The notes under the pieces are model-generated. The model searched no databases. It had not been told where the DNA came from and saw only the letters and a program-made list of their open reading frames with translations. Below, one piece after another: positions 1 through 21,050 of a stretch of 27,596 nucleotides of DNA; positions within the stretch are counted from its first letter, which is position 1; the number at the start of each line of letters is the position of its first letter. The position numbers and the translations under genes are program-made. This DNA comes from Octopus sinensis (Eukaryota): the NCBI RefSeq assembly GCF_006345805.1, contig NW_021833324.1, positions 1 through 27,596 of the forward strand, in the 5' to 3' direction.

Positions 1-218
1 TTTGTCTTCTGGGTGTTTAGCTCGTTGTGGGTAATAAAGAAATAGGTACGTTCTCTGCCGCTACTGTCTGAGTTCAAATTCCGCCGAGGTCGACTTTGCC
101 TTTCATCCTTCGGGGTCGATAAATTAACATATACACAAAGACAGACAGACACACACACACACACACGCACATACATACATACACACATACATAGAAACAT
201 ACATACATACATACATAC

Positions 219-249
<31 letters not shown>

Positions 250-834
250 CATAAGTCAGAGAGAGAGTGCCGCTACATTGTTGCTCAGTATCCTAGAAAT
301 AGCAACCAAATCACCCTGTGATTACCTAACCCTTGTACTTAGATAATAGTTGTGATTATCCCAGTCGTATTACCTGCTCATTTACGGCTGTCAGAGTTAG
401 ACAATAATTCATTTGCTACACAGCTAATCGAGTGAACTAATGTTAAAAATCTTAACCAAGAATAAAAATTACAACCATTGTTGGACTTATTTTATCGTAC
501 TTTCGTTAGCTTTGGCTGCTATTTCTAGCATATGGATAGCCTTCTTGACGGCCTGATCGATTTGCTCGACTAAAGGCGGTGCTCCAGCATGGCCACTTCC
601 AAATGACTGAAACAAGTAAAATAAAATAACATATATATATATACATAAACATATATATATATATTATATATATATATATATATATACATAAACATATACA
701 GATATATATATACTCAGGTAAATTGTAATTGAAGAAATCCTATATTGTAGATTTCTATAACTGACAAAGAGAGGCAGATAAAATCTACCTTTTATAATAA
801 GAGATAAATATATACATATATATATATACATATA

Positions 835-1180
835 TACGACAGGCTTCTTTCAGTTTCCGTCTACAAAATCCACTCACAAGGCATTGGTCGGCCCGGGGCT
901 ATAGCAGAAGACACTTGCCCAAGATGCCACGCAGTGGGACTTAACCCGGAGCCATGTGGCTGGTTAGCAAGCTACTTACCACACAGCCACCCCTAAGTCT
1001 ATATACATATATACGACAGGTTTCTTTCAGTTTCCGTCTACTAAATCCACTCACAAGGCATTGGTCGACCCGGGGCTATAGCAGAAGACACTTGCCCAAG
1101 ATGCCACGCAGTGGGACTGAACCCGGAGCCAAGTGGTTGGTTAGCAAGCCACTTACCACACAGCCACTCCTGCGCCTATA
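835..1180 (-). mobile_element. Two tandem 5' halves of SINE family A (local ~177-bp duplication)
   Basis: Near-identical copies at 835-990 and 1012-1180 sharing private variants (ggcattgg, ccggagcc); head at 1157-1180. Confidence 0.85.
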
Positions 1181-1261
1181 TGTATATATATATCCATATA
1201 TATATATACGTAAACATATACATATATATACATAAACATATACATATATATATATATATAT

Positions 1262-2832: not shown

Positions 2833-2863
<31 letters not shown>

Positions 2864-2869
2864 GTATAT

Positions 2870-3068
2870 ATATTTCAAAATAGAAAATTACCCTTTAACA
2901 GGCAATTTTTACATGCTAGAAATAGCAGCAAAGATTGCTACGATCCATTATTTTCTGGCAAATTTTGAAGTACATGAAAAATAAAGACCTTTATTTTTTT
3001 ATATATGTATATATATATACATCTACATATATATATATATACACACACACACATATGTATAGATATAT

Positions 3069-3130
<62 letters not shown>

Positions 3131-3713
3131 CATAAATATATAAATATATATATAAATATATATATATATATATGTACATATATAGGCGCAGGAGTGGCTG
3201 TGTGGTAAGTAGCTTGTCTACCAACCACATGGTTGCGGGTTCAGTCCCACTGCGTGTGTATTTGTGTGTCTGTGTTTGTCCCCTAGCATTGCTTGACAAC
3301 CGATGCTGGTGTGCTTATGTCCCCGATCGGCAAGAGAGACCGATAGAATAAGTCCTGGGATTGCAAAAGAATAAGTCCCGGGGTCGAGTTGTTCGACTAA
3401 TGGCGGTGCTCCAGCATGGCCGCAGTCAAATGACTGAAACAAGTAAAAGAAAAGAATAAAAGAATATATATATGTACCAGTTTCGCACTTGGGTCGATGT
3501 AATCGACTTAATCCCTTTGTCTGTCCTTGTTTGTCCCCTCTATGTTTAGCCCCTTGTGGGTAGTAAATATATAGATATATAGATATTTCAAAATAGAAAA
3601 TTACGCTTTAACAGGTAATCTCTACATGCTAGAAGTAGCAACAAAATCTTGGCACGATCCATTATTTTCTGGCAAATTTTGAAGTCCATGAAAAATAAAA
3701 ATCTTTATCTTGT

Positions 3714-3720
<7 letters not shown>
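2870..3720. repeat. ~130-bp direct repeat (2873-3000 and 3585-3712)
   Basis: tatttcaaaatagaaaattac...gatccattattttctggcaaattttgaagt occurs twice, ~712 bp apart. Confidence 0.8.
3183..3462 (+). mobile_element. SINE family A with internal deletion of the central region
   Basis: Head runs to ...cccactgcgtg and joins directly to the GT-rich/3' tail part. Confidence 0.85.
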
Positions 3721-3780
<60 letters not shown>

Positions 3781-3793
3781 TACATATATATAT

Positions 3794-3826
<33 letters not shown>

Positions 3827-3839
3827 ATATGTATATGTA

Positions 3840-4038
3840 GGTCTCGGGTTGATCCGGGGTTAACCACAGTAAGTAAGGTACTCAATACATAGCAGAGTAA
3901 AATTAATTTATTATATAGAAGGAGCTTCTACAGGACTAGTACTGTTTCATTCAAGAGAAATCTTCAGGAAGGCTTCCTGAAGATTTCTCTTGAATGAAAC
4001 AGTACTAGTCCTGTAGAAGCTCCTTCTATATAATAAAT
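3840..4038. mobile_element. Probable Penelope-like retroelement end in inverted (fold-back) arrangement; perfect 66-bp arms 3906-3971 / 3973-4038
   Basis: Arms checked as perfect reverse complements around G3972. The left arm extends ~65 bp further and contains the hammerhead motif. PLE assignment is inference. Confidence 0.6.
3968..4026 (+). ncRNA. Type I hammerhead ribozyme motif, Penelope-like-element type; mirror copy on the minus strand at ~3918-3976
   Basis: Stem I GCUUC(3972-76)/GAAGC(4016-20); core CUGAAGA 3977-83; stem II UUC/GAA with UCUU loop (U-U at the base); GAAA 3996-99; stem III ACAG/CUGU with palindromic ACUAGU loop; GUA cleavage triplet 4013-15. Confidence 0.7.
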
Positions 4039-4060
4039 ATATATATGTATATATATATAT

Positions 4061-4545
4061 GTACCAGTTACGCACTGGAGTCGATATAATCGCCGTATGT
4101 CTGTCCTTGTTTGTCCCCTCTGTGTTTAGCCTCTTGTGAGTAGTAAAGAAATAGGTATTTTGTCTGCCGCTACGCTCTGTGTTCAAATTCCCCCGAGGTC
4201 GACCTTGCTTTTCATTCTTTCGGGGTCGATTAAATAAGTACCAGTTACGCACTGCGGTCAATATAATCGACTTAATACTTATGTCTGTCGTTGCTTGTCT
4301 TCTCGGTGTTTAACCCCTTGCGGGTAGTAAAGGAATTGGTATGTTGTCTGCCACTACGGTCTGAGTTCAAATTCCGCCGAGGTCGACTTTGACTTCCATC
4401 CTTCGGGGTCGATAAATTAAGTACCGGTTACTACGCACTGGGGTCATTATAATCGATTTAATCCGTTTGTCTGTCCTTGTTTTTCCCCCCTGTGTTTAGC
4501 CCCTTGTGGGTAGTAAAGAAATAGGTATTTCGTCTGCCGCTACAC
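4061..4545 (+). repeat. Tandem ~180-bp head-less SINE family B units
   Basis: gtacc(a/g)gtta at 4061, 4238 and 4421; each unit has a B-box and lacks the A-box. Confidence 0.85.
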
Positions 4546-4556
4546 TACACACACGC

Positions 4557-4658
<102 letters not shown>

Positions 4659-5052
4659 GTACGGTGTTTAGACCATTGTGGGTAATAAAGAAATAGGTAC
4701 GTTGTGTGCCGCTACGGTCTGAGTTCAAATTCCGCCGAGGTCGACTTTGCGTTTCATCCTTCGGGGTCGATAAATTAACATATACACAAAGACAGACAGA
4801 CACACACACACACGCACATACATACATACATACATAGAAACATACATACATACATACATACATACTTACATACATACATAAGTTTGAGAGAGAGTGCCGC
4901 TACATTGTTGCTCAGTATCCTAGAAATAGCAACCAAATCACCCTGTCATTACCTAACCCTTGTACATAGATGATAGTTGTGATTATCCCAGTCGTATTAC
5001 CTGCTCATTTACGGCTGTCAGAGTTAGACAATAATTAATTTACTACACAGCT

Positions 5053-5945
5053 GTAATCGATGTAATCGACTTAATCCCTTTGTCTGTCCTTGTTTGTCCC
5101 CTCTGTGTGTAGCCCCTTGTGGGTAGTAAAGAAATAGGTATTTCGTCTGCTATTACGTTCTGAGTTCAAGTTCCACCGAGGTCGACTTTGCCGTTCATCA
5201 TTTCAGGGTCGATAAATAAAGTACCAGTTTCGCACTGGAGTCAATGTAATCGACTTAATCCATTTGTCTGTCCTTGTTTGTCCCCTCTGTGTTTAGCCAC
5301 TTGTGGGTAGTAAAGAAATAGGTATTTCGTCTGTCGTTACGTTCTGAGTTCAAATTCCGCCGAGGTCGACTTTACCTTTCATCATTTCAGGGTCGATAAT
5401 TTGGGTACCAGTTACGCACTGGGGTCGATGTAATCGACTTAATCCGTTTGTCTGTCCCCTCTGTGTTTAGCCCCTTGTGGGTAGTAAAGAAATAGGTATA
5501 TTACGTCTGCGGTTACGTCCTGAGTTCAAATTCCGCCGAGGTCGACTTTGCCTTTCATCATTTCAGGGTCGATAAATAAAGTACCAGTTACGCACTGGGG
5601 TCGATATAATCGCCTTAATCAGTATGTCTGTCATTGTTTGTCCCCTGTGCGTTTAGCCCCTTGTGGGTAGTTAAGAAATAGGTATTTTGTTTGCCGCTCC
5701 GCTCTGAGTTCAAATTCCGCCGAGGTCGGCCTTGCTTTTCATTCGTTCGGGGTCGATTATATAAGTACCAGTTACGCACTGGGGTCAATATAATCGACTT
5801 AATACCTTTGTCTGTCTTTGTTTGTCTTCTGGGTGTTTAGCTCATTGTGGGTAATAAAGAAATAGGTACGTTCTCTGCCGCTACTGTCTGAGTTCAAATT
5901 CCGCCGAGGTCGACTTTGCCTTTCATCCTTCGGGGTCGATAAATT
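5053..5945 (+). repeat. Tandem ~180-bp head-less SINE family B units, about 5 copies
   Basis: gtaccagtt at 5221, 5405, 5581 and 5765 (spacing 176-184 bp). Confidence 0.9.
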
Positions 5946-6034
5946 AACATATACACAAAGACAGACAGACACACACACACACGCACATACATACATACAC
6001 ACATACATAGAAACATACATACATACATACATAC

Positions 6035-6065
<31 letters not shown>

Positions 6066-6443
6066 CATAAGTCAGAGAGAGAGTGCCGCTACATTGTTGC
6101 TCAGTATCCTAGAAATAGCAACCAAATCACCCTGCGATTACCTAACCCTTGTACTTAGATAATAGTTGTGATTATCCCAGTCGTATTACCTGCTCATTTA
6201 CGGCTGTCAGAGTTAGACAATAATTCATTTGCTACAAAGCTAATCGAGTGAACTAATGTTAAAAATCTTAACCAAGAATAAAAATTACAACCATTGTTGG
6301 ACTTATTTTATCGTACATTCGTTAGCTTTGGCTGCTATTTCTAGCATATGGATAGCCTACTTGACGGCCTGATCGATTTGCTCGACTAAAGCCGGTGCTC
6401 CAGCATGGCCACTTCCAAATGACTGAAACAAGTAAAATAAAAT

Positions 6444-6455
<12 letters not shown>
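5821..6455. repeat. Local segmental duplication of 1-640; third partial copy at ~4670-5052
   Basis: Base-level match including non-SINE sequence (gtgccgctacattgttgctcagtatcctagaaatagcaacc...). Confidence 0.9.
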
Positions 6456-6485
<30 letters not shown>

Positions 6486-6486
6486 C

Positions 6487-6525
<39 letters not shown>

Positions 6526-6544
6526 TAAAAGAACATATATATAT

Positions 6545-6787
6545 ATGTTTTTATTCACCTTGTTTCAGTCATTTGACTGTGGCCATGCTGGAGCACCGCC
6601 TTTAGTCGAGCAAATCGATCCCAATACTTATTCTTATGAAGCCTAGAGGTTCGTGCCAAGCGGCTAATTGACGGGGATGTAAACACCTCCAGCGTCGGTT
6701 GTCAAGCGATGTTCGGGGGGAGGGACAAACAGACACACACACATATATATATATATATTTATTTATATACGACGGGCTTATTTCAGT
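6545..6787 (-). mobile_element. 3' part of SINE family A, cut off by the CpG-rich block
   Basis: Matches the SINE up to gacgggcttatttcagt at 6787; shares an internal deletion with the 1262-1532 copy. Confidence 0.8.
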
Positions 6788-6959
6788 CGAAAAATAACAA
6801 GTTAAATGATTTTATTTTTCACGTAAAATCGAAATTGCTAATATCGAAATTACGACCGCTACATTACGAACAAAACTACAGGGACGTCGTGGTTTCTTTA
6901 ATCGTAAAGAAAACAAAAAGTGCCACCGTGGGGCCGCCAGCTACGCCTTTGGCCCGCGT

Positions 6960-7280
6960 GCTCGTATAGCAAAACGTAAACATCCGGTGAATTTATGCTT
7001 CAAGTTACGGTACGAAGCAATGTCAACAAAACTCTAGCGTGGTGGCTATCGGGAAGATAATACAAAGTTTCGCATACGATCACCGCGTCACGCCGCGTTG
7101 TCGTATATCAAAACGTAAACATCCGGTAAATTTATGCTTCAAGTTACGGTACGAAGCAATGTCAACAAAACTCTAGCGTGGTGGCTATCGGGAAGATAAT
7201 ACAAAGTTTCGCATACGATCACCGCCTCACGCCGCGTTGTCGTATATCAAAACGTAAACATTCGGTAAATTTATCCTTCA
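6960..7280. repeat. 139-bp tandem repeat, ~2.3 copies
   Basis: aaaacgtaaacat(c/t)cgg recurs at 6971, 7110 and 7249; the first two units are nearly identical. Confidence 0.9.
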
Positions 7281-7797
7281 CCTTACGATATGCACCGGGA
7301 AAATACACATACGTGGACTGACCCGTAATTAAAAAAAATCAGACCCGTAAGCTTACGGATCGGCCCACGCTGGATAGTCACGCTCTAGGTGACCGTCGCA
7401 CGCCGGTCGCCTGCGTCTCCGCCGCCGTACTGTGCGTGAAATCGAAAGCACGAAACTAAACGCGCGATATCGTCCGTACGTATAAAAACAGCGACGTGGT
7501 CCGACCCGTAAGTCGTAGGAGGTGCTCAGACCGCAAGGAAACGGATCGGCCCCGGCTGGATAGTCACGCTCTAGGTGACCGTCGCACCCCAAGGGGGCCC
7601 AGACTATATTAGGGGATGAACATCAGGCAAAAATTAGCCAGCCGGCAAGATTCGTATTCTCAGTTAATTTCTGGACGCCTTGCTATACTGTTCCCAGTTC
7701 GATATCGTCCTACAACGGTTTGCTTTGCCAAAAATTGTCCGCACTTGCCCGCGTACGTTAGCTTTTCGCGGTGGTTCGCTCCTTCTCTCGCGTTCGT

Positions 7798-10172
7798 GAG
7801 TTCGATATCAGCCAGGACGTCGCGGCCCGTAGCTTTGCGTTTTTATTTATTTATTTTATTGTTCGTTCGTTCGGTAGCGTTGCTGTGATGTTATGTTGGT
7901 AAAGTAAACGTCACGAGTTCGATATCAGGCAGGGCCTCGCGGCCCGAAGCGCAACATTTTTTTTTTTTTGCTCGCTCGTTCGGTAGCGTTGCTGTGTTCA
8001 GTGATGTTATGTTGGGAAAGTAAACGTCACGAGTTCGATATCCGGCAGGTCCTCGCGGCCCGAAGCGTAATATTATTTTTTTTTTTGTTCGCTCGTTCGG
8101 TAGCGTTGCGGTGTTCAGTGATGTTATGTTGGTAAAGTAAACGTCACGAGTTCGATATCAGTCAGGGCCTCGCGGCCCGAAGCGTGATATTTTTTTTTTT
8201 TTTCGCTCGTTCGGTAGCGTTGCGTTGTTCAGTGATGTTATGTTGGTAAAGTAAACGTCACGAGTTCGATATCAGGCAGGGCCTCGCGGCCCGAAGCGTA
8301 ATTCTTTTTTTTTTTTGTTCGCTCGTTCGGTAGCGTTGCGTTGTTCAGTGATGTTATGTTGGTAAAGTAAACGTCACGAGTTCGATATTAGGCAGGGCCT
8401 CGCGGCCCGAAGCGTGAAATTTTTTTTTTTTTTAGTTCGCTCGTTCGGTAGCGTTGCGGTGTTTAGTGATGTTTTGTTGGTAAAGTAAACGTCACGAGTT
8501 CGATATTAGGCAGGGCCTCGCGGCCCGAAGCGTGAAGTTTTTTTTTTTTAGTTCGCTCGTTCGGTAGCGTTGCGGTGTTTAGTGATGTTTTGTTGGTAAA
8601 GTAAACGTCACGAGTTCGATATCAGGCAGGACCTCGCGGCCCGAAGCGTAACATTTTTTTTTTTTGCTCGCTCGTTCGGTAGCGTTGCTGTGTTCAGTGA
8701 TGTTATGTTGGTAAAGTAAACGTCACGAGTTCGATATCAGGCAGGTCCTCGCGGCTCGAAGCGTAATATTATATTTTTTTTTTTGTTCGCTCGTTCGGTA
8801 GCGTTGCTGTGTTCAGTGATGTTATGTTGGTAAAGTAAACGTCACGAGTTCGATATCAGCCAGGGCCTCGCGGCCCGAGGCGTAAAACTTTTTTTTTTTG
8901 TTCGCTCGTTCGGTAGCGTTGCGTTGTTCAGTGATGTTATGTTGGTAAAGTAAACGTCACGAGTTCGATATCAGGCAGGGCCTCGCGGCCCGAAGCGTAG
9001 AGTTTTTTTTTTTTTTTTTGTTCGCTCGTTCCGTAGCGTTGCGTTGTTCAGTGATGTTTTGTTGGTAAAGTAAACGTCACGAGTTCGATATCAGGCAGGG
9101 CCTCGCGGCCCGAAGCGTTATATTATTATTTTTTTTTGTTCGCTCGTTCGGTAGCGTTGCTGTGTTCAGTGATGTTATGTTGGTAAAGTAAACGTCGCGT
9201 GTTCGATATTAGGCAGGGCCTCGCGGCCCGAAGCGCAAGATTTTTTTTTTTTTTTGTTCGCTCGTTCGGTAGCGTTGCTGTGTTCAGTGATGTTATGTTG
9301 GTAAAGTAAACGTCACGAGTTCGATATCAGGCAGGTCCTCGCGGCCCGAAGCGTAATATTATTTTTTTTTTTTGTTCGCTCGTTCGGTAGCGTTGCTGTG
9401 TTCAGTGATGTTATGTTGGTAAAGTAAACGTCACGAGTTCGATATCAGGCAGGGCCTCGCGGCCCGAAGCGTGAAATTTTTTTTTTTTAGTTCGCTCGTT
9501 CGGTAGCGTTGCTGTGTTCAGTGATGTTTTGTTGGTAAAGTAAACGTCACGAGTTCGATATCAGGCAGGGCCTCGCGGCCCGAAGCGTAAAATTTTTTTT
9601 TTTTTTGTTCGCTCGTTCGGTAGAATTGCGTTGTTCAGTGATGTTTTGTTGGTAAAGTAAACGTCACGAGTTCGATATCAGGCAGGGCCTCGCGGCCCGA
9701 AGCGTAATATTATTATTTTTTTTTGTTCGCTCGTTCGGTAGCGTTGCTGTGTTCAGTGATGTTATGTTGGTAAAGTAAACGTCGCGTGTTCGATATCAGG
9801 CAGGGCCTCGCGGCCCGAAGCGCAAGATTTTTTTTTTTTGTTCGCTCGTTCGGTAGCGTTGCTGTGTTCAGTGATGTTTTGTTGGTAAAGTAAACGTCAC
9901 GAGTTCGATATCAGCCAGGGCCTCGCGGCCCGAAGCGTAAAACTTTTTTTTTTGTTCGCTCGTTCGGTAGCGTTGCTGTGTTCAGTGATGTTTATGTTGG
10001 TAAAGTAGCTTTCGCGAGTTTCATATCAGCCAGGGCCTCGCGGTCCGAAGCGTAAGATTTCTTTCTTATTTTTGTTCGCTCGTTCGGTAGCGTTGCTGTG
10101 TTCAATGATGTTATGTTGGTAAAGTAGCCTTCGCGAGTTCGATATATGAGCCAGGGCCTCGCGGCACGTAGC
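7798..10172. repeat. ~117-bp tandem array, 20 full units plus a partial unit
   Basis: Unit starts (gagttcgata) at about 7798, 7915, 8031, 8148, 8262 ... 10016, 10135. Each unit has GGGCC-TCGC-GGCCC followed by a variable T-tract. Confidence 0.97.
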
Positions 10173-10309
10173 GTTAAGTGATTGTCATACGACGCTGGTT
10201 TTCCAAACGTCCCTAAACCGGTCGGTGGTCCTCTAGCGGCGGCGTTGCCAATAACTGAAAAATGCAGCGGCGACTATGACCGACGCATGAGTATATGTGT
10301 CCGTGTGAT

Positions 10310-10790
10310 ATGGACGAGGCACGAATCGGCAACTCCTGGGGTGAGTTCTCGGTATCGAGCACGACTGGGGCCGGCGTGTCGGCGGACGAATCCCAAAGCA
10401 CGACAAAAGCCCAGCCAAACGGCGGCGGGAGAATCTCGGAGAAAGATCGCAGTGCTTAAGTAGCAGGTGATTTAGGTCGGTCGATAAGTCAAACTTATAG
10501 TCGACGTGAAGCACGAGAGTGTGTTTGTGTAATATCGGCGATGCACGAATCGGCAACTCCTGGGGTGAGTTCTCGGTATCGAGCACGACTGTGGCCGGCG
10601 TGTCGGCGGACGAATCCCAAAGCAAGACAAAGCCCAGCCAAACGGCGGCGGGAGAATCTCGGAGAAAGATCGTAGTGCTTAAGTAGCAGGTGATTTAGGT
10701 CGGTCGATAAGCCAAACTTATAGTCGACGTGAAGCACGAGAGTGTCAGTATGTGATCGACGAGGCAGGAAGCGGCGATTTCTGAGGTGAG
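10310..10790. repeat. ~224-bp direct duplication (2 copies plus a partial third)
   Basis: cacgaatcggcaactcctggggtgagttctcggtatcgagcacg at 10320 and 10544; gtgagttctcggtatcgag again at 10786 and 12301. Confidence 0.9.
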
Positions 10791-10859
10791 TTCTCGGTAT
10801 CGAGCACGAGTGGGGCCGCTGTGCCGGCGGACAACACCGGACTTTCTCGAAACTAATGG

Positions 10860-12665
10860 TGTCGTCACCCACGTACACGTGGACGTACCCACGACCAATG
10901 CTGGAAGGATGCCACGAGATACACGTGGTTGGTACTGCGACGTGGTCCGTCCCGTAAATTCCCGAAAGAAGGAAACTGCGGCGAGTATAAAGTAGGGGCC
11001 GCCAGTAGAAGGGTTGCGCTAGCTGCCCGTTGCTCCGCCGCCCTACCGTGCCCGATCTAGTAAGGCTGATGCGAACCTCGCGGTATCGCCTTCGTACACG
11101 TGGACGTACACGCGACCGATGCCGGAAGGATGTCACGAGATACACGCTGTCGATACAGAGACGTAGTCCGCCCCGTAAAATCCCGAAAGATGGCAACTGC
11201 GGCGAGTACAAAGTAGAGGCCGCCAGCGGCAGGGTTGCGCCAGGCCTGCGCCAATCGCCCGGAGCTCCGCCGCCCTGCCGTGCCCGAAATCGAAAGAACG
11301 AACCTAAGCTCGCGGTATCGCCACGTAAACCTGGACGTACACGCGACCGATGCCGGAAGGATGTCACGAGATACACGCTGTCGATACAGAGACGTAGTCC
11401 GCCCCGTAAAATCCCGAAAGATAGCAACTGCGGCGAGTATAAAGTAGAGGCCATCAGCGGCAGGGTTGCGCCAGGCCTGCGCCAATCGCCCGGAGCTCCG
11501 CCGCGTTACCGTGCCCGAAATCGAAAGAACGAACCTAAGCTCGGGGTATCGCCACGTAAACCTGGACGTACACGCGACCGATGCCGAAAGGATGTGATGA
11601 GATACACGCTGTCGATACAGAGACGTAGTCCGCCCCGTAAAATCCCGAAAGATGGCAACTGCGGCGAGTACAAAGTAGAGGCCGCCAGCGGCAGGGTTGC
11701 GCCAGGCCTGCGCCAATCGCCCGGAGCTCCGCCGCCCTGCCGTGCCCGAAATCGAAAGAACGAACCTAAGCTCGCGGTATCGCCACGTAAACCTGGACGT
11801 ACACGCGACCGATGCCGGAAGGATGTCACGAGATACACGCTGTCGATACAGAGACGTAGTCCGCCCCGTAAAATCCCGAAAGATAGCAACTGCGGCGAGT
11901 ATAAAGTAGAGGCCATCAGCGGCAGGGTTGCGCCAGGCCTGCGCCAATCGCCCGGAGCTCCGCCGCGTTACCGTGCCCGAAATCGAAAGAACGAACCTAA
12001 GCTCGGGGTATCGCCGAGTAAACCTGGACGTACACGCGACCGATGCCGAAAGGATGTGATGAGATACACGCTGTCGATACAGAGACGTGGTCCTTCCCGT
12101 AAAGTCCCGAAAGATGGAAACTGCGGCTAGAATAAGGTGGGGGGCCGCCATCGGCAGGGTGCGGCAGCCTCTCGGAGCTCCGCCGCCCTAATGTACCCGT
12201 TAGAACGAACAGAAGCTCGCGATGTCGTCCACGTACGCGTGGACGTACACGCGACCGTGTACCAGAGTTATCGACGAGGCACGAAGCGGCGAGTTCTGGG
12301 GTGAGTTCTCGGTATCGAGCTCGAGTGAGGCCGCTGTGTCGGCGGACGACACCGGACATTCTCGAAGCTAATGGTGTGACCCACGTAAACGTGGACGTAC
12401 CCGCGACCAATGCTGGAAGGATATCACGAGATACACGCTGTCGATACAGCAACGTGGTCCGTTCCGTAAATTCCCGAAAGATGGAAACTGCGGCTAGTAT
12501 AAAGTAGGGGCCGCCAGCGGCAGGGCTGCGCAAGGCCTGCACCAGTCGCCCGTTGCTCCGCCGCGTTACCGTGCCCGAAATCGAAAGAACGAACCTAAGC
12601 TCGCGGTATCGCCCGAGTACACGTGGACGTACCCGCGACCGAGGTCGGAAAAGTATCACGAGATA
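10860..12665. repeat. 231-bp GC-rich tandem array with a 462-bp dimeric higher-order repeat
   Basis: ggacgtac at 10881, 11102, 11333, 11564, 11795, 12026, 12241, 12393 and 12625. Diagnostic variants alternate (gatggc/gatagc, gccgcc/gccatc). Confidence 0.95.
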
Positions 12666-12692
12666 TACCACACAGCCACTCCTGCACCTATA
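12666..12692 (-). mobile_element. 5' head (~25 bp) of SINE family A
   Basis: taccacacagccactcctgcaccta is the reverse complement of the head at 18013-18037 with one mismatch. Confidence 0.7.
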
Positions 12693-13032
12693 TTCATTTT
12701 TCTGCATTTAACACAGCTGAGACGCCGTACACTCACACATGTATGTGCATGTATACACATAAATATATATGTTTATATATGCAATAGAAATATGCACGCA
12801 TATGTATGTATAAGTTTATATATATATATACACACATTATATTAATACATACATTTTTATACTTATTTACGTGTATATATACACATGTTAGCACATATGT
12901 ATATCTATCTATACACACACACACACACACACACACAGATTATATATATATTATATATATATATATATATATAATGTATATATGTGTGAGTCTGTATATA
13001 TGTATGTATGCATGTATCTATATATATATATA

Positions 13033-13262
13033 TTTGTTTACTACCCACAAGGGGCTAAACATAGAGGGGACAAACAAGGACAGACAAAGGAATTAAGTCG
13101 ATTACATCGACCCCAGTGCGAAACTGGTACTTAATTTATCGACCCCGAAAGGATGAAAGGCAAAGTCGACCTCGGCGGAATTTGAACTCAGAGCGTAACG
13201 GCAGACGAAATACGTCTACGCATTTCGCCCGGTGTGCTAACGTGTCTGCCAGCTCGCCGCCT
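13033..13262 (-). mobile_element. Full-length tRNA-derived SINE, family B
   Basis: Minus strand: ggcggcgagcTGGCAGACACGTTAGC (A-box-like) ... GAGTTCAAATTCC (B-box), then gtcgactttgcctttcatcctttcggggtcgataaattaagtacc and the tail. Confidence 0.85.
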
Positions 13263-13324
13263 TTTTATATATATATGCGGATATATTGTATGTGTAAGCA
13301 TATGTATATGCATTTATACACATA

Positions 13325-13718
13325 CTAGCAGTATCGCCCGGCGTTACTCGGGTTTGTAAGGGAAATAATTATATAAGCATTTTTAGAGATGTAAAGTATA
13401 ATAGCCATCTCAATATGGCTAACCACAAAGGGGGAGGGGTGTTACTGTAGCTTTTTACGTTCTGAGATTTAATAATAAATTTTAGAGAGTTACTTCCCTT
13501 ATATATGTCAAAAATGGATTAAAAATGGGAAAAATTGATGGTAAATTTTTTTTTAATCGTAGACTCATCGTAGACGCGCGCTAATACCCAGACGGTCTGG
13601 ATATGAATCACGACTATAAGATACCCGGTTTTGGTTAAACTGCACCACAAAATGTGGGAGTAGTTAGGAATCTAAATCGTAGGAGACAGACACACAACCT
13701 CACTTTTATATATAAAGA
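13325..13718 (-). mobile_element. Non-autonomous Helitron-like element, family 1, apparently complete
   Basis: Minus strand A|TC... start at 13718, subterminal CCCG..CGGG hairpin, CTAG end at 13325-28 followed by T (A|T target). Confidence 0.8.
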
Positions 13719-13811
13719 TTTCCTCTATTTACATAATATTGAGGTCTCTTTCTTTCTTTTGTTATCTTACTGTTTTTACCAATATACATATATATATATA
13801 AATATATATAT

Positions 13812-14135
13812 AGTTACAGAGATGTACTTGCATAGCAAGTGACTTGATCTGAGATCGTGTGCTGGAGCGAAAACAGTTGCAGCGTTGAAGGTGTTTATAA
13901 GCCATTTAAGAAACACACAAAAACCGTTAGATTCACTTCAACATTTAAATTAAATTTGTCAAAATATTTTCGTTGCTTTGAGACCGCGACCTGTTAGCAC
14001 GATATTTTTATCAGTGAACAGGTCGCGGTCTCAAAGCGACGAAAATATTTTGGCAAATTAAATTTAAATGTTGAAGTGAATGTAACGGTTTTTGTGTGTT
14101 TCTTAAATGGCTTACAAACACCTTCCACGCTGCAA
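13812..14135. mobile_element. Second probable Penelope-like element end in inverted arrangement; ~119-bp arms 13877-13995 / 14017-14135
   Basis: Arms are reverse complements with about 6 mismatches. The left side extends ~65 bp further and the centre abuts the hammerhead core. Confidence 0.6.
14007..14057 (+). ncRNA. Minimal type I hammerhead ribozyme motif with G3-C8 core variant
   Basis: Core GUGAACA 14014-20, extra G, stem II GUCGC/GCGAC, GAAA 14041-44, palindromic AAUAUU stem III 14044-49, U17. Stem I UUUAUCA/UGGCAAA has one mismatch; the other arm preserves UGACAAA. Confidence 0.6.
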
Positions 14136-14214
14136 TATATATATACACACATATATATATATGTATGTATGTATGTGTGTATATGTGTATGCATGTATGT
14201 GTGTGTGTGTGTGT

Positions 14215-14435
14215 GCGTGTCTGTGCTTGTGATTGTCCTCCACCACTGCTTGACAACGAATGTTGGTTTGTTTACATCCCTGTCACCTAGTGGTTTGACA
14301 AAGGAAACAGATAGAATAAGTACTATGCTTACAAAAATAAAACTGGAGTTGATTCATTAAACTACAATTCTTCAAGGCATTGCCCCAGCATGGCCACAGA
14401 GCAATGGCTGGAAAAAGCAGAAGAATAAAAGAATT
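14215..14435 (+). mobile_element. Diverged 3' half of SINE family A
   Basis: cttgacaacgaatgttggt...gatagaataagtact...ccagcatggccacagagcaatggctggaaaaag. Confidence 0.6.
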
Positions 14436-14439
14436 GAGG

Positions 14440-14620
14440 GGGACCTCTACATGGTAGCTAGACCTGGTAGAAATAGCAGCAAAATTCCCCCAAATCACAC
14501 CTTACTGTCTTATCTATGTATATATGTATGTATGAGCCTAGGGGAGACCTCTACATGGCAGCTAGACATGGTAGAAATAGCAGCCAAATCTCCCTCAAAT
14601 CACACCTTACTGTCTTATCT
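14440..14620. repeat. ~102-bp tandem pair of a dispersed repeat (ctagaaatagcagccaaatctccctcaaatcacacc type)
   Basis: Two copies; related motifs at ~291, ~4920, ~6110 and ~19921. Confidence 0.7.
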
Positions 14621-15115
14621 TTCTGCTACTTGGATATAGGTGTTATATTCGTCTAAAAAAACTTTCCTGTCACACACTCACGTACACGCACACACACACA
14701 CACACACACACACGCGCGCGCACCGTCACACACACACACACGCGCACACACACACACACACACGCACGTTAGCTTACAATTTTATTTATATATTTGCGTG
14801 TGTATGTGTGGAAATGGAAGTGGGAGGCAGAGTGAAAGAATCACTCACCACAGTAAGTGAATTAGTTTCATTTTATTCGTTGCCCACTGTGTGTGTGCGT
14901 TTGCGTGTGGTGTAAACCAGACTAAGAAAAGCATTTGACACACACACCAGAATGTGAGTTTTCTGTAAATTTTGCTTAATTGGAGTTTAAATTTTAAAAA
15001 CTGGACCTGGCATGACGCGATGCATTGTACTCTTAAAAATGCCAGATAAATTGTAATTGAAGAAATCCTATATTGTAGATTTGTATAACTCCCAAAGGGA
15101 GGCAGATAAAATCTG

Positions 15116-15727
15116 CTCGGGTTTGTAAGGGAAATAACTATATAAGCATATTTAGAGAGTTATAGCCAAAAAATAGCAAAAAATGCATTAAAAATGGAAA
15201 AAATATGATGGTAAATTTTTTTTAAATCGTTGACTCATCGTAGACATTTTTAGAGAGTTACTTCCCTTATATAATAGCGAAAAATGCATTAAAATGGAAA
15301 AAAAACGATGGTAATTTTTTTTTTAAATCGTAGACTCATGTAGACGCTTTCTTAGCCATTTCTGTTTTGGTGTCTTCAAGCCATGAAGTCGTTGTTCTAA
15401 AAGAACACTGGTCTCCTTGACAACGCATTACGACGTTGATTTCCTTACACTCCCTTCCCCACAGGTGCAGGTGTGAGCGTGGACGCCAACTCCGCCGCCA
15501 TCGACACACGAAAAATTATGCATTAAAAATGGAAAAAAAATGATGTTAAATTATTTTTAAATCGTAGACTCATCGTAGACGCGCGCTAATATTCAGACGG
15601 GCTCGACATGAATCACGACTATAAGCTACCCGAATTTGGTTAAACTGTACCGCAAAATGTGGGAGTAGTTAGGAATCTAAATCGAAGGGGACAGACACTC
15701 ACACAACTACAGTTTTATATATATAGA
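15116..15727 (-). mobile_element. Helitron-like family 1 copy lacking its 3' end, with internal subrepeats and ~150 bp of extra sequence
   Basis: Same 5' end (ttttatatatatagat) and body as 13325-13718; three aaaatgcattaaaa...aaatcgtagactc subrepeats. Confidence 0.75.
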
Positions 15728-15744
15728 TATACATAGCGCAGTAG

Positions 15745-16112
15745 TGGTGAGATATGACAGCAAAGAAAAGCATACATTCACTCTCTGCATGCAATTAGAC
15801 TCGGAAAGTTCGTGAGGAACCCATTGACCCAATTTGCTGACTTTTCCGATAGCACACAGGTGTCAATGAATGGTTGAATGACCAAATCCAAGCTTCTCTG
15901 CTTGTTCCTCAACAGTTACGATGATATTTTGTTCCACCAGGGTTTTCAGGATGTCCTTGTCGAGTTCTACAGATCTTTCAGGATGAGGCTCGTCTTCTAG
16001 GTTGTAGTTTATGGCTCGGGATTTCTGGAACCACCATTGACACTGCCTTACGCTTATTGTCCAATCCCCATATACTGCATAAATATTTCTTGTACTTTGC
16101 ACACATTTATAT
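15745..16112 (-). pseudogene. Decayed mariner (Tc1/mariner) transposase fragment: N-terminal HTH region and WVPHEL motif
   Basis: Translation STRNIYAVYGDWTISVRQCQWWFQKSRAINYNLEDEPHPERSVELDKDILKTLVEQNIIVTVEEQAEKLGFGHSTIH*HLCAIGKVSKLGQWVPHELSESNCMQRVNVC. WVPHEL is at 15806-15823, with an in-frame TGA at 15863-15865. No DD34D region or TIRs seen. Confidence 0.93.
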
Positions 16113-16405
16113 TCTGTTATTCTTTTATATGTTTCAGCCTTGAGGTTGTGGCCATGCTGGATCATGTGTGTGTGTTGTTGTGTGTGGTGTTGTGTGTGTC
16201 TATCTGTCTGTATGTATATATGTATATGTATGTGTGTGAACAATAATATTTTCAACAGATGTGTTGCAAATGTATCTGATTGTTCTCAAGCTTCAATACT
16301 GTGTGTGTGTGTATGTGTGTGTGTGTGTATGTATGTATGTATATGTATGTATGTATGTATATGTATGTATGTATGTATGTGTGTATGTATGTGTGTGTGT
16401 ATGTA

Positions 16406-16440
<35 letters not shown>

Positions 16441-16896
16441 ATGTATGTATGTATGTATGTATGTATGTATGTATGTATGAGTGTATGTTTACTTTATTAC
16501 TAATTACTCTCTTCCAAGAACATTTTCACTCACTCTTAGCTCTTAGCTTCCCATACATTTTACTCATGTATCTATCATCGTCATAGACAGAATACTTTCA
16601 CTTAAGACTTCCTCAAATCACTGTCTATTTACTTTCATTTTATTCGTTGCCCACTGTGTGTGTGCGTTTGCGTGTGGTGTAAACCAGACTAAGAAAAGCA
16701 TTTGACACACACACCAGAATGTGAGTTTTCTGTAAATTTTGCTTAATTGGAGTTTAAATTTTAAAAACTGGACCTGGCATGACGCGATGCATTGTACTCT
16801 CAAAAATGCTAGGTAAATTGTAATTGAAGAAATCCTATATTGTAGATTTGTATAACTCCCAAAGGGAGGCAGATAAAATCTGCCTTTTATAATAAA

Positions 16897-17167
16897 CTAG
16901 CAGTATCGCCCGGCGTGCTCGGGTTGTAAGGGAAATAACTATATAAGCATTTTTAGAGAGTTATAGCCAAAAATAGCAAAAAATGCATTAAAAATTGAAA
17001 AAAAATTAAGGTAAATTTTTCTTTAAATCGTTGACACATCGTAGATATTTTTAGAGAGTTACTTCCTTATAAAAAAGCGAAAAAATGCATTAAAATTAAA
17101 AAATATGATGGTAATTTTTTTTTTAAATCGTAGACTCATCGTAGACGCGCGCTAATACCCAAAGGGC
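16897..17167 (-). mobile_element. Helitron-like family 1, 3' part
   Basis: ctagcagtatcgcccggcgtgctcggg end; 5'-truncated. Confidence 0.75.
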
Positions 17168-17659
17168 TCGTTTGTTATTCTGGGTAACTTCTGTAAAATT
17201 ATTAAAATTTTGTTCAAACATCGCTATAGAAAATGGGTTATTAGCTATATTCAATTGGGTATACAACAAAATTTTACGATAGAATTGTTATTCTGGGTAA
17301 CTTTCTGATACCCATAATAAATTTATGGCAAAATAGGCCTTAATTTCATTTAAGGTTGAGGGAAATAACAAACTATCCTTTCTTTCGGTTTGTTTACGTT
17401 TAGCGTAATGATTTCAAATAGGCTCATTCGAAAAAGTAAATAGAAATAGTGTAAGGCTTTACTCTTCTGGGAAAGTCTGTGGCTTGGTCCATTTTCTTCA
17501 GAAAACTCACCAAAGAAACAGTTTTTAAATTTTCACTCCATTCAGGTGCCAATTCGTTTTTTTATCGCTGTCGGATTCACTGTTTTCACTTTAATAGCTG
17601 CAAACTTGCAAAGACAAAGGAGGAGAAGGGTGATAGCGTCAGTGAAACAATTCGCTCCT

Positions 17660-17901
17660 TTGTGTGTGTGTGCGTTTGCGTGTGGTGTAACCAGACTAAG
17701 AAAAGCATTTGACACACACACCAGAATGTGAGTTTTCTGTAAATTTTGCTTAATTGGAGTTTAAATTTTAAAAACTGGACCTGGCATGACGCGATGCACT
17801 GTACTCTTAAAACTGCTAGGTAAATTGTAATTGAAGAAATCCTATATTGTAGATTTCTATAACTCCCAAATGGAGGCAGATAAAATCTGCCTTTTATAAT
17901 A

Positions 17902-17906
<5 letters not shown>
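17660..17906 (-). mobile_element. Helitron-like family 2 (related copies at 14866-15115, 16633-16895 and 717-804)
   Basis: Minus-strand start A|TCTCTTATTATAAAA followed by the hairpin GGCAGAT-TTT-ATCTGCC; near-identical ~250-bp copies. No 3' CTAG identified. Confidence 0.55.
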
Positions 17907-17944
<38 letters not shown>

Positions 17945-17960
17945 TGTATGTATGTATGTA

Positions 17961-18012
<52 letters not shown>

Positions 18013-18015
<3 letters not shown>

Positions 18016-18405
18016 GCGCAGGAGTGGCTGTGTGGTAAGTAGCTTGTTTACCAACCACATGGTTCCGGGTACAGTCCCACTGCGTGGCATCTTGGGCAAG
18101 TGTCTTCTACTATTGCCTCGGGCCGACCAAAGCCCTGTGAGTGGATTTGTTTGATGGAAACTGAAAGAAGCCCGTCGTATATATTTATATATATATATGA
18201 GTGTGTGTGTGTGTCTGTGTTTGTCCCCCTAGCATTGCTTGACAACCGATGTTTACGTCCCCGTTACTTAGCGGTTCGGCAAAACAGACCGATAGAATAA
18301 GTACTAGGCTTACAAAAGAAAAAGTCCCGGGATCGAGTTGCTCGATAAAGGCGGTGCTCCAGCTTGGCCGCAGCCAAATGACTGAAACAAGTAAAAGAGT
18401 AAAAG
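18013..18405 (+). mobile_element. Full-length tRNA-derived SINE, family A (OR2-like, CORE-type)
   Basis: A-box-like TGGCTGTGTGG, B-box-like GGTACAGTCCC, CORE-like ATCTTGGGCAAGT, internal microsatellite, tail TGACTGAAACAAGTAAAAGA. Many partial copies in the window. Confidence 0.85.
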
Positions 18406-18539
18406 GATATATATATATACATAAATAGATATATACATAAAAAGATAGACAGATAGAGAGATAGATGGCTAGATAGATAGGGGAAAGAGTCAAACAGACA
18501 TATATATATATATACATAAATATATATATATATATATAA

Positions 18540-18582
<43 letters not shown>

Positions 18583-18590
18583 ATATATAT

Positions 18591-18643
<53 letters not shown>

Positions 18644-19093
18644 GAGGAGTGAGAGGCAGAAAGTGACGTTCCCGGATACCAACACACACACACAACATCA
18701 CACATAAATACACACACACGCACAAACATAAACAGGCGTGTATACACACACACACAGACACACCGATACACACCCCAGACATCATTCGTCTTATGTGTAT
18801 ACATGTGTATATACTCCACCCTCTCTCTCTCCCCCTTTCTCTCTCTATAGACGTATGTAATATTCATACACACTTACATATATAAATATTTACCTGCTTA
18901 TGTACATACATAAATACATACATATACACACATCCGTTAGTTTTCCTTTCTTTTTCACGTCCAAATTAATTATAATTCCTAATTAATGACTTAATTGTGA
19001 GACCTTAATGTCATTTAACTTATTTAATTCATAAAAATGCTGACAATGTCTCTTTGATTTTAAATAAATAATTTAGACAAAGTTTTGTCTAAA

Positions 19094-19185
19094 TTTCCCG
19101 CCTTTTTCTCCACGTTTTTTGTCATTCAAATTAGCGTTGCTAGGCAACATATAGAAACAATTGAACGGGAAGCGGCAGAAGTTAT
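19094..19185. promoter_or_regulatory. Candidate promoter: E2F-type TTTCCCGC (19094) and RFX X-box GTTGCTAGGCAAC (19136-19148)
   Basis: Motifs match established consensus sites and lie in locally CpG-containing, non-repetitive sequence upstream of a good splice donor. Confidence 0.5.
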
Positions 19186-19292
19186 AGAGACTCCAGACTG
19201 GGCGGTTTGTGTGATACCAGACCAGAAATATCACCAGACACCCTTAAGCATGGGTTGTCACAGATGGATTTACCCGTCATCTTCTCTACGAG
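19170..19292 (+). other. Candidate first exon of an unidentified plus-strand gene
   Basis: Ends at the donor CGAG|GTATGC (19292/19293); ATGs at 19250 and 19264. No product recognisable. Confidence 0.35.
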
Positions 19293-19516
19293 GTATGCTT
19301 ATGTGTGTGCAAGAAGGCTACGTATAATAATGATGTATATTTATATTCCTATATAAATGTATTGGCAATCCTGAGTCGGAAATTATCCAATACCTGAAAT
19401 ATTCCAACATCTTTTGATATTTCTTTTTTAAACTTGTACATATACATGAATAAATGTATACACAAACACACATACATAATATATATATATACACACCTAC
19501 ATTTCTACAGTTATAT

Positions 19517-19564
<48 letters not shown>

Positions 19565-20708
19565 CATCCTGTGGCATAACTACAGATGAACACCCCATCG
19601 ACTTTGTTTCCTCATAACTTCCAGGAAGATGGATATTTTTAATGAAACTTCCACTTTCATTTTCTAAGAGAAAAGCATGCTCTCAAAAGAAATCCTCTTT
19701 TACAAAGCTCTTATTTAAATCCCTGTGGATAAATCCCAGCAAGAATCTTCTCAGGCTCTCCAATATTTTACAATTATATAAAGAGAAAGAATCGGGGGCC
19801 AGAAAGTGGGGCTAAAAATAATCAGAGATTTTTTAAATATTCTTTTTATTTTTTTATAACATAAATGTGTTTCTGAGGGAAAAAATGAGAAAAAAAAAAG
19901 AAGACAAGGAGGGTGGTGTGCTAGAAACAACAGCCAAATCTCCCTTAAATCACACACTTTTTCCCTCGAACCCTTACAAAACATTTTGCCAACAAATTTC
20001 TTTTTAATCGTAATCTACATCGTTTGAAAGTTATTTCTACCAAATTTCATTCAAAAATACCCATTTTTATACAAAAATACCTTTATACACATGTATATAC
20101 CTACATATACACACATGTCTTTGCTATGTTTTTTAAACACATAAAACTCATAGATGCATACTTTTATAATATTTTACACTTAAACCGCCACAGGACAATA
20201 TTTTCAGAGTTGCTTCTTAAAGTGTCCTTCACTTTTTTTATGACAAACGATACAAATTTCAGAGTATTTGGCTGTTATTTCTAGCATGATGTTAGGCCAT
20301 CTATAGGACAATATTTGACATGGATGCTTTGCAAATTGTCCTTGGATTTTTATTTGTGATGAGACAAGAATGTGAAGGTTTAGGTGGCTCTTTCTAGCAT
20401 GAAATGAGACCATATACAGGTCAATTTTATTTATGAATGCTTCTTATCTGTCCTTCAAATTTTATATGAAAAGTAAAGTGGTTTCTATTTCTAGCGTGAA
20501 AAATGACCAGCTATGGGAAAGCTTTTACTGAATGCTTCTTAAAGTGTCCTTCTCTTTTTTTATGAACCCCCAACAACAACCCTACGAGGACGAAAGGCAA
20601 TGTTTGTGCGTGTGTGCAGTTGGAATGTCACTGCAACAACAACAACAATCTATTCTTATTAAACGTTAAAAACTGTCAGATGCAGACTGCACACACGCAC
20701 GCACAACG

Positions 20709-20984
20709 CTGATGACGACGATGATGATGATGGTGATGATGGTGATGATGACGACGACGATGATGACGATGATGGTGATGATGATGATGATGACGACGAT
20801 GATGATGATGATGACGATGATGATGGCGATGATGGTGATGATGATGATGGTGATGATGACGACGATGATGATGATGATGACGATGATGGTGATGATGATG
20901 ATGGTGATGATGATGACGATGATGATGATGATGATGATGATGATGACGATGATGGTGATGATGATGATGATGACGATGATGACG

Positions 20985-21015
<31 letters not shown>

Positions 21016-21050
21016 CGATGATGATGGTGATGATGATGACGATGATGGTG

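What the first reader, a model, noticed from the sequence alone, without database searches (positions are those of the whole stretch)
6788..12665. 5.9-kb CpG-rich multi-satellite block sitting inside a split SINE
Seen: the left flank is the 3' part of SINE A ending at 6787 and the right flank is the 25-bp head starting at 12666, both on the minus strand. Against the intact copy (18013-18405), ~122 bp (18038-18159 equivalent) is missing and there is no target duplication. The block has no microsatellites or SINEs and contains four repeat families in a nested order (10755-11110 recurs at ~12270-12660). Inference: foreign DNA patched into a break. Candidate sources are an rDNA intergenic-spacer orphon, a subtelomeric or centromeric satellite, or viral homologous-repeat DNA.
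Basis: partly seen in the sequence, partly recalled or inferred. Interest (0 to 1): 0.72.

Follow-up and report, generated by a model that had tools for sequence, protein, structure and literature searches.

The report
Spacer-like repeat block inside octopus SINE
A 5.9-kb stretch of CpG-rich, non-coding tandem repeats really does sit inside a broken SINE in this Octopus sinensis contig; it is an old insertion shared with Octopus vulgaris, it looks like a ribosomal-DNA spacer although its source could not be traced, and it is a curiosity rather than a new kind of element.

Summary
Window 6788-12665 is a compositionally distinct block: GC 0.52 and CpG o/e 1.62, against 0.36-0.38 and 0.7-0.9 in the flanks. 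It is built only of direct tandem arrays (139, 186, 118, 223 and 231 bp) and interrupts a minus-strand SINE. About 122 bp of the SINE are missing, there is no target duplication, and the joins are blunt.

It is not a misjoin. The window is an O. sinensis contig. The same block with both junctions is present at the orthologous locus of O. vulgaris chromosome OX597841.1 and in a diverged second O. vulgaris copy. Array copy numbers differ among the three.

The block has no genes, no terminal repeats, no rRNA or tRNA, and no telomere repeats. It matched nothing in the viral, phage, metagenome or protein collections. The proteins annotated on it are spurious translations of the 231-bp array.

Its architecture resembles an rDNA intergenic spacer: one-directional sub-repeats, poly-T units, a reiterated TATA+GGGG motif and CpG-island composition. 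No octopus rDNA could be reached with these tools, so that origin is inferred only.

Best reading: ectopic spacer-type DNA captured during end-joining repair of a break, then evolving as a variable repeat cluster. Interest is low to moderate.

The parts
6548..6787 (-). 3' part of the split SINE A (positions about 148-393 of the intact copy, including its internal microsatellite)
   Evidence: blastn; global alignment
6788..12665 (+). Inserted CpG-rich non-coding block made of direct tandem arrays, all in one orientation
6788..6953 (+). A+T-rich leader of the block. It holds a degenerate fragment of the 231-bp module: the 12-nt word GGGGCCGCCAGC at about 6930 is shared with 12507.
6954..7287 (+). 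139-bp array, 2.4 copies here. Both O. vulgaris loci have one copy fewer.
7345..7590 (+). 186-bp spaced duplicate. It encloses a degenerate, rearranged 231-type module at 7401-7511.
   Evidence: (D13, D7)
7798..10174 (+). 118-bp array, 20 copies. Each unit holds a T10-T18 run and a short GC hairpin. The edge units are degenerate (61-78% identity to the reference unit). A 234/350-bp higher-order periodicity is present.
10296..10832 (+). 223-bp array, 2.4 copies in all three loci
10741..11092 (+). Edge module A: the head of a 223-bp unit plus a 231-type unit, with an intact TATAAAGTAGGGG motif at 10985-11005
10869..12167 (+). 231-bp array, 5.7 copies with a 462-bp dimer periodicity. The inner units carry a weakened form of the motif.
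11069..12130 (+). Annotated 353-aa protein P0001. It is a spurious ORF that stays open because 231 = 3 x 77.
12256..12665 (+). Edge module A', a repeat of module A (84% over 350 nt) with an intact motif at 12497-12517. The block ends abruptly inside a 231-type unit.
12666..12690 (-). 25-bp 5' head of the split SINE A
18013..18405 (+). Intact SINE A copy used as the reference. Its positions 26-147 are the part missing at the split copy.

Best explanation
A piece of non-coding, tandem-repeat-rich DNA from elsewhere in the octopus genome was joined into a double-strand break inside a SINE by an end-joining type of repair. About 122 bp of the SINE were lost. The most likely source is a fragment of a ribosomal-DNA intergenic spacer or a spacer-like array. 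The event happened in an ancestor of O. sinensis and O. vulgaris and predates a local duplication of the region.

Since then the block has behaved as a passive cluster of variable-number tandem repeats. The interiors of the arrays are homogenised and change copy number by unequal exchange or slippage, while the edge units decay. It encodes nothing, and the proteins annotated on it are artefacts.

Shown: the insertion anatomy, its age relative to the species split, the copy-number variation, and the absence of coding or transposon features. Inferred: the repair mechanism and the rDNA-spacer origin.
For: Insertion anatomy. There is a single 122-nt gap in the SINE, no target duplication, 0-1 nt of overlap at the join, and no inverted or direct terminal repeats. 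The block has no similarity to any non-block DNA in the window, L001, L002, L004 or L005.

Real and old.
- The window is contig VCDQ01003899.1 of GCA_006345805.1, which is O. sinensis (PMC10700109).
- Both junctions are 99.4% and 99.6% identical at O. vulgaris OX597841.1, 9.61-9.64 Mb (L002).
- They are 98.0% and 96.5% identical in scaffold CATOCA020000018.1 (L001).

Variable arrays. Copy numbers in window/L002/L001 are 20/19/30 for the 118-bp unit, 5.7/9.6/3.6 for the 231-bp unit and 2.4 in all three for the 223-bp unit. Edge units are more diverged than inner ones.

Non-coding. Variable sites by codon position are 3/8/4. There is no credible Pfam hit, and no relative exists outside the ORF's own three-member cluster among 5.8 billion and 1.84 billion proteins.

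Spacer-like features. All arrays point one way. A poly-T run occurs in each of the 20 units. A TATA+GGGG motif is reiterated 6 times in the window, 10 times in L002 and 4 times in L001, always on the + strand. Degenerate copies of the promoter-bearing module lie on both sides of the 118-bp array. The composition is that of a CpG island.

Published spacers have the same features. PMC6730533 describes sub-repeats, CpG islands over most of the spacer, a poly(T) tract as putative terminator, and core promoters with TATA and GGGG boxes. PMC1215480 (abstract) describes duplicated core promoters.
Against: No sequence of octopus rDNA could be compared, so the spacer origin rests on resemblance only. 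No fragment of 18S, 5.8S or 28S lies at either end or anywhere in the window, L001 or L002. The block begins and ends inside repeat modules, so it carries no landmark of a spacer boundary.

The TATA+GGGG motif is intact only in the two edge modules. The inner 231-bp units have GAGG, and half of them have TACA. The annotated protein sets show the 231-bp array at only these three loci; this is weak evidence, because rDNA is rarely annotated with proteins.

The repair mechanism is deduced from the scars. No empty site was found.
Confidence: 0.45

Rival explanations
1. The mode of arrival is the same (capture at a break), but the source is some other complex satellite: a subtelomeric, pericentromeric or locus-specific minisatellite cluster, not rDNA.
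For: The block carries no rRNA fragment. Multi-family CpG-rich arrays also occur outside rDNA. No second source locus could be shown at all.
Against: There are no telomere repeats. The locus lies at 9.6 Mb of a 29.2-Mb chromosome. Promoter-like modules reiterated on both sides of a poly-T array, all in one direction, are more typical of a spacer than of a plain satellite.
Confidence: 0.3
2. The block is the non-coding part of a transposable element that landed in the SINE. Candidates are promoter-bearing 5' monomer arrays of a LINE, a repeat-carrying Helitron or Helentron derivative, or the interior of an LTR element.
For: Tandem CpG-rich monomers that each carry a TATA-like motif recall the promoter monomers known from some LINE 5' ends (from memory, not tested). 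Octopus genomes hold many active TE families (PMC13282606).
Against: There is no target duplication, no inverted or direct terminal repeats, no Helitron-type ends, no poly(A) and no ORF with a TE domain. The target lost 122 bp, which transposition does not cause. The only other copies share their flanks over several kb, so they arose by duplication, not transposition. No copy occurs in about 110 kb of other octopus DNA.
Confidence: 0.1
3. The block is a reverse-transcription chimera. A LINE enzyme copying a SINE RNA jumped to a long non-coding transcript, for example an antisense spacer transcript, and then back to the SINE RNA.
For: The SINE 5' end is complete to position 1. Both SINE parts are collinear and in the same orientation.
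Against: It needs two template jumps, a 5.9-kb antisense transcript and a return to the same RNA. Target-site hallmarks of the SINE cannot be read because its tail abuts a microsatellite. Nothing specifically favours this reading.
Confidence: 0.05
4. The block is a fragment of viral DNA (a repeat region of a large DNA virus) or other horizontally acquired DNA.
For: Its composition differs strongly from the host flanks.
Against: There is no protein-coding potential and there are no palindromic repeats. Three exact-pattern scans of IMG/VR found nothing. So did the tblastn-confirmed viral scan, blastn against phage records and two metagenome scans. These searches are insensitive to diverged DNA.
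Confidence: 0.03
5. The block is an assembly artefact: a misjoin of unrelated reads.
For: The window is a short unplaced contig, and tandem arrays are hard to assemble.
Against: Both junctions are reproduced at 96.5-99.6% identity in two loci of an independent assembly of another species.
Confidence: 0.01

Closest known systems
rDNA intergenic spacer of invertebrates (Drosophila, Daphnia and mussel types) and dispersed rDNA-spacer orphons
   Same: Several sub-repeat families sit in one orientation. A promoter-like module is reiterated, with intact copies at defined places. Poly-T tracts and CpG-island composition are present, and sub-repeat number varies between copies (PMC6730533, PMC1215480).
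   Different: No rRNA gene fragment is attached. Identity with the species' own spacer is untested. The block sits alone between the two parts of one SINE in a gene-family cluster.
Filler-DNA insertions at repaired double-strand breaks, such as nuclear copies of mitochondrial DNA
   Same: There is no target duplication, target bases were lost, the joins are blunt or have 1 nt of overlap, and the inserted DNA is unrelated to the site.
   Different: The size is large (5.9-8.4 kb), the source has not been identified, and the content is purely tandem repeats.
SVA-type composite retrotransposons (SINE-VNTR-SINE)
   Same: The linear order is superficially similar: SINE head, then variable tandem repeats, then SINE tail.
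   Different: There is no sign of mobility. The three copies share flanks over kilobases, and there is no poly(A) or target duplication.
Promoter monomer arrays at LINE 5' ends (mouse L1 type)
   Same: Tandem CpG-rich units of about 200 bp each carry a promoter-like motif.
   Different: No LINE body follows, and four other unrelated arrays are attached. The comparison is from memory only.

Membership tests
rDNA intergenic-spacer orphon | Sequence identity with the spacer between 28S and 18S of the same species | not testable with these tools
   No eukaryotic genome or read collection can be searched by DNA. Protein-based routes found only the three paralogous or orthologous loci.
rDNA intergenic-spacer orphon | Attached remnant of 28S 3' end, ETS or 18S | tested here: not met
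   No Rfam match at gathering score in the window, L001 or L002, and none at E<=1 in 6500-12900.
rDNA intergenic-spacer orphon | Unidirectional sub-repeat arrays with duplicated promoter modules (TATA and GGGG boxes) and poly-T tracts | tested here: inconclusive
   The pattern is present and matches published descriptions. Promoter or terminator activity is not shown, and the motif is degenerate in the inner units.
Transposable element (DNA transposon, Helitron, LTR or LINE) | Target-site duplication, or the family's characteristic termini | tested here: not met
   No TSD, no TIR, no terminal direct repeat longer than 12 nt, no poly(A), and the ends do not fit Helitron termini (sequence).
Transposable element (DNA transposon, Helitron, LTR or LINE) | Dispersed copies with unrelated flanks | tested here: not met
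   L001 and L002 share flanks with the window on both sides. No other copy occurs in L004, L005 or elsewhere in the loci. The sample is small.
Transposable element (DNA transposon, Helitron, LTR or LINE) | Coding capacity, or relation to an autonomous partner | tested here: not met
   Only repeat-generated ORFs are present, with no TE domain.
Endogenous viral fragment or viral homologous repeats | Viral genes, or palindromic repeat units with matches in viral collections | tested here: not met
Subtelomeric satellite | Telomere repeats adjacent, and a chromosome-end position | tested here: not met
   No TTAGGG dimer with up to 1 mismatch. The orthologous locus lies at 9.6 Mb of 29.2 Mb.
Break-repair filler insertion | Target deletion, no duplication, and blunt or microhomology joins | tested here: met
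Break-repair filler insertion | Identified donor locus and an empty ancestral site | not testable with these tools
   No outgroup locus was obtainable: the closest O. bimaculoides protein (78% identity) is not on record. Paralogous gene copies do not extend to the block.

The most novel reading that the evidence does not exclude
The block is not inert. On this reading it is a spacer-derived, germline-unmethylated array of promoter and terminator modules that has been kept since before the O. sinensis / O. vulgaris split. It would act as a transcription unit or chromatin element, for example a source of non-coding or small RNA or a nucleolus-associating site, inside a rapidly expanding octopus-specific gene cluster. 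A second version is that the DNA was acquired horizontally from a parasite or virus.
Probability: 0.06. Interest if true: 0.6.

Novelty: new member of a known kind. Interest (0 to 1): 0.3.

Why it matters
If the spacer origin is confirmed, this would be a dated natural example of kilobase-scale capture of rDNA-spacer DNA at a chromosome break in a cephalopod. It has a readable scar (a SINE with 122 bp missing) and three copies that show how sub-repeat arrays expand and contract after leaving the rDNA.

In practice it flags three database proteins as translations of a 231-bp repeat. They are the window's 353-aa product, CAI9742837.1 (which UniRef labels 'serine/arginine repetitive matrix protein 1-like') and CAJ1099424.1.

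It does not point to a new mechanism or a new class of element.

Tried and rejected
Searches that found nothing:
- Rfam at gathering score on the window, L001 and L002, and at E<=1 on the block; only microsatellite-type false miRNA hits in the flank.
- ARAGORN found no tRNA.
- Pfam on all block ORFs gave only sub-threshold or repeat-inflated hits. YuA_Gp49 scored 37.8 bits with 0 stretches passing, so it was rejected as an artefact.
- The protein search with the 231-bp ORF found only its own cluster. A concatenation of the other nine block ORFs from both strands found no hit.
- Exact look-ups of three block ORFs in public assemblies: not on record.
- Three IMG/VR pattern scans, one tblastn-confirmed viral scan, two metagenome scans and one phage blastn: nothing.
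- A literature search for octopus or cephalopod rDNA spacers or satellites, and for four motif strings from the block: nothing relevant.
- No telomere repeats.
- The 118-bp unit has no structure beyond shuffles as RNA, z = -0.37.

Ideas tested and dropped:
- The bacterial-type terminator scan shows the hairpin plus T-run only in some units and is not meaningful here.
- I looked for an empty site downstream of two paralogues of the neighbouring gene. Homology there stops within 1 kb of the gene, so they are uninformative. The closest O. bimaculoides relative in the hit list (78% identity) is not on record.
- The left-flank paralogue inside the window (1-712 matches 5821-6527) diverges before the SINE, so it gives no empty site either.
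- In situ origin of the block from the missing SINE segment is rejected: the block has no similarity to any SINE copy.
Full report
**What the window is.** A cluster look-up of the longest block ORF showed that its only relatives are two Octopus vulgaris 'hypothetical predicted proteins'. The ORF itself lies on contig VCDQ01003899.1, which is 27,596 bp long, the same length as the window, and belongs to assembly GCA_006345805.1. The O. vulgaris genome paper names that assembly as O. sinensis (PMC10700109). The surroundings are typical octopus intergenic DNA: microsatellites, SINE copies, SINE-derived tandem arrays and a mariner-like element.

**Checking the observation.**
- blastn of the intact SINE at 18013-18405 against the window places its positions 148-379 at 6787-6559 and its positions 1-25 at 12690-12666. 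Both are in the same orientation, opposite to the intact copy.
- The intact copy reads as a tRNA-derived SINE on the + strand, so the split copy is on the minus strand.
- Joining the two flanks in a script and aligning them to the intact SINE gives one clean internal gap of about 122 nt, with a single ambiguous T at the join.
- There is no target duplication. The block ends share no inverted repeat and no direct repeat longer than a 12-nt motif word (one search finds no inverted pair of 30 nt or more).
- The block has GC 0.515 and CpG o/e 1.62. The flanks have 0.36-0.38 and 0.71-0.89.
- No microsatellite of period 2-6 and no SINE lies inside the block.

**Anatomy of the block.** Everything is in direct orientation.
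- An A+T-rich leader (6788-6953) is followed by a 139-bp array (x2.4, 6954-7287).
- Next comes a 186-bp spaced duplicate (7345-7590). It encloses a degenerate, rearranged piece of the 231-bp module (7401-7511).
- A short unique stretch follows, then 20 copies of a 118-bp unit (7798/7844-10174). Each unit has a T10-T18 run preceded by a small GC hairpin. The first and last units are degenerate.
- A 120-bp unique stretch follows, then a 223-bp array (x2.4).
- A 231-bp array (x5.7, with 462-bp dimer periodicity) is bracketed by two edge modules, A (10741-11092) and A' (12256-12665). They are 84% alike over 350 nt.
- The motif GTATAAAGTAGGGGCCGCCAG is intact only in A and A'. The inner units carry GAGG in place of GGGG, and every second unit has TACA in place of TATA.
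- The block stops abruptly inside a 231-type unit.

**The block is not coding.** Long ORFs on both strands arise because 231 = 3 x 77. Among twelve in-register units from three loci, variable sites fall 3/8/4 on codon positions 1/2/3, so there is no third-position excess. The Pfam hits are artefacts of repetition. Neither the word-indexed search of 5.8 billion proteins nor the exhaustive search of 1.84 billion representatives found any relative outside the three-member cluster. A concatenation of the other nine block ORFs found nothing.

**It is real and old.** Two O. vulgaris loci were retrieved through the cluster members. L002 is chromosome OX597841.1, 9,614,037-9,636,022. L001 is the unplaced 78-kb scaffold CATOCA020000018.1.
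- L002 is collinear with the window from about 2850 to 21160, at 98-99.4% identity in unique parts. It is therefore the orthologous locus.
- Both junctions are present in both loci: left 99.4% (L002) and 98.0% (L001), right 99.6% and 96.5%.
- L001 shares several kb of flank on each side but is only 92-97.6% identical to L002. It is a diverged duplicate or a very divergent haplotype.
- The insertion therefore predates the species split and that duplication, and a misjoin is excluded.
- Array copy numbers differ. The 118-bp unit has 20/19/30 copies in window/L002/L001, the 231-bp unit 5.7/9.6/3.6, the 139-bp unit 2.4/1.4/1.4, and the 223-bp unit 2.4 in all three.
- In O. vulgaris only, a copy of the mariner-like element seen at window 15114-16895 has landed inside the block (L002 4808-6663, 97.7% identical).

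**Where it came from.** The block has no detectable similarity to any non-block DNA in the window, L001, L002, L004 or L005, about 110 kb in all. It is therefore neither a common dispersed repeat nor derived from the SINE.
- It contains no rRNA, tRNA or other Rfam family and no telomere repeats.
- Nothing matched in IMG/VR, phage records or JGI metagenomes.
- Its architecture is what the literature describes for rDNA intergenic spacers. Those have sub-repeat families, CpG islands over most of the spacer, poly(T) tracts taken as terminators, and core promoters with TATA and GGGG boxes (PMC6730533). They also have duplicated promoters within the spacer (PMC1215480, abstract).
- Degenerate copies of the promoter-bearing module lie upstream of the poly-T array, and better copies lie downstream, all in one direction. 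This is the layout expected of a spacer.
- This is a resemblance, not a test. No octopus rDNA sequence could be reached with the tools, and no rRNA remnant is attached.

**How it got there and what it does.** Three features are the signature of end-joining repair that captured a stray DNA fragment: loss of 122 bp of target, the absence of any duplication or element termini, and a blunt join. Transposition does not leave that signature.
- A reverse-transcriptase template-switch chimera is possible but needs more steps.
- Substitution counts hint that the block's CpGs are not hypermutable. Against the ortholog, 0 of 251 CpG positions differ versus 9 of 967 others. Against L001, the figures are 7 of 305 versus 20 of 1141. 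In the right flank against the ortholog they are 3 of 66 versus 16 of 1247. This would fit an unmethylated state, but the numbers are small.
- Unique parts of the block diverge between the species about as fast as the flanks (98.1-99.7% against 98.0-99.3%). There is therefore no sign of constraint.
- I conclude that the block is a passive, variable repeat cluster.

**Context.** The block lies about 9 kb downstream of a 1463-aa intronless ORF (21688-26079, minus strand). The ORF has no Pfam domain and belongs to an octopus-only family with more than 30 paralogues on the same O. vulgaris chromosome. Two neighbouring paralogues, at 9.57 and 9.72 Mb, share only the gene and less than 1 kb of flank with the window. 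The block is therefore not part of that duplication unit.

**Verdict.** The rDNA-spacer source is the best guess but unproven, the viral source is unsupported, and the misjoin is refuted. It is a new instance of known processes, of low to moderate interest.

Noticed in passing
window 21688-26079 (-), with further ORFs at 25971-26255 and 26264-27079 (-): A 1463-aa intronless ORF with no Pfam domain. It belongs to an octopus-only family with more than 30 paralogues (75-96% identical) clustered on O. vulgaris chromosome OX597841.1. Members also occur in O. sinensis and O. bimaculoides. The function of the family is unknown.
   Followed up: partly
window about 14862-16895; L002 4808-6663: A mariner-like element (ORF with the Mos1 HTH_48 domain at 15863-16255). 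A 97.7% identical copy is inserted inside the block in O. vulgaris but not in O. sinensis or L001, so the family was active around or after the species split.
   Followed up: partly
window 11069-12130 (+); L002 10001-11986; L001 10001-10600: Three database proteins are translations of the 231-bp tandem array: the window's 353-aa product, CAI9742837.1 (661 aa) and CAJ1099424.1 (199 aa). Their Pfam 'YuA_Gp49' hit is a repeat artefact.
   Followed up: yes
window 823-1190, 4094-4543, 5060-5944: SINE-derived tandem arrays. One is two head-to-tail copies of the SINE A head (177-bp period). The others are up to five copies of a 184-bp unit from a second tRNA-like SINE.
   Followed up: no
window 1-712 and 5821-6527: A 0.7-kb direct duplication at 96.8% identity, about 5.8 kb apart, in the left flank. 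The two copies diverge at an (AT)n microsatellite before reaching the SINE.
   Followed up: partly
window 20710-21272: A long (TGA)n array followed by a (GAC)n-type array, about 0.4-1 kb from the stop codon of the large ORF. It creates poly-Ser, poly-His and poly-Met ORFs.
   Followed up: no
window 6788-7843 and 10175-10868 versus L002 and L001: CpG positions in the block are not substituted more often than other positions: 0/251 versus 9/967 against the ortholog, and 7/305 versus 20/1141 against L001. This hints at a lack of germline methylation, but the numbers are small.
   Followed up: partly
window 6954-7287: The 139-bp unit has one more copy in O. sinensis (2.4) than in either O. vulgaris locus (1.4). 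This looks like a recent species-specific duplication.
   Followed up: partly
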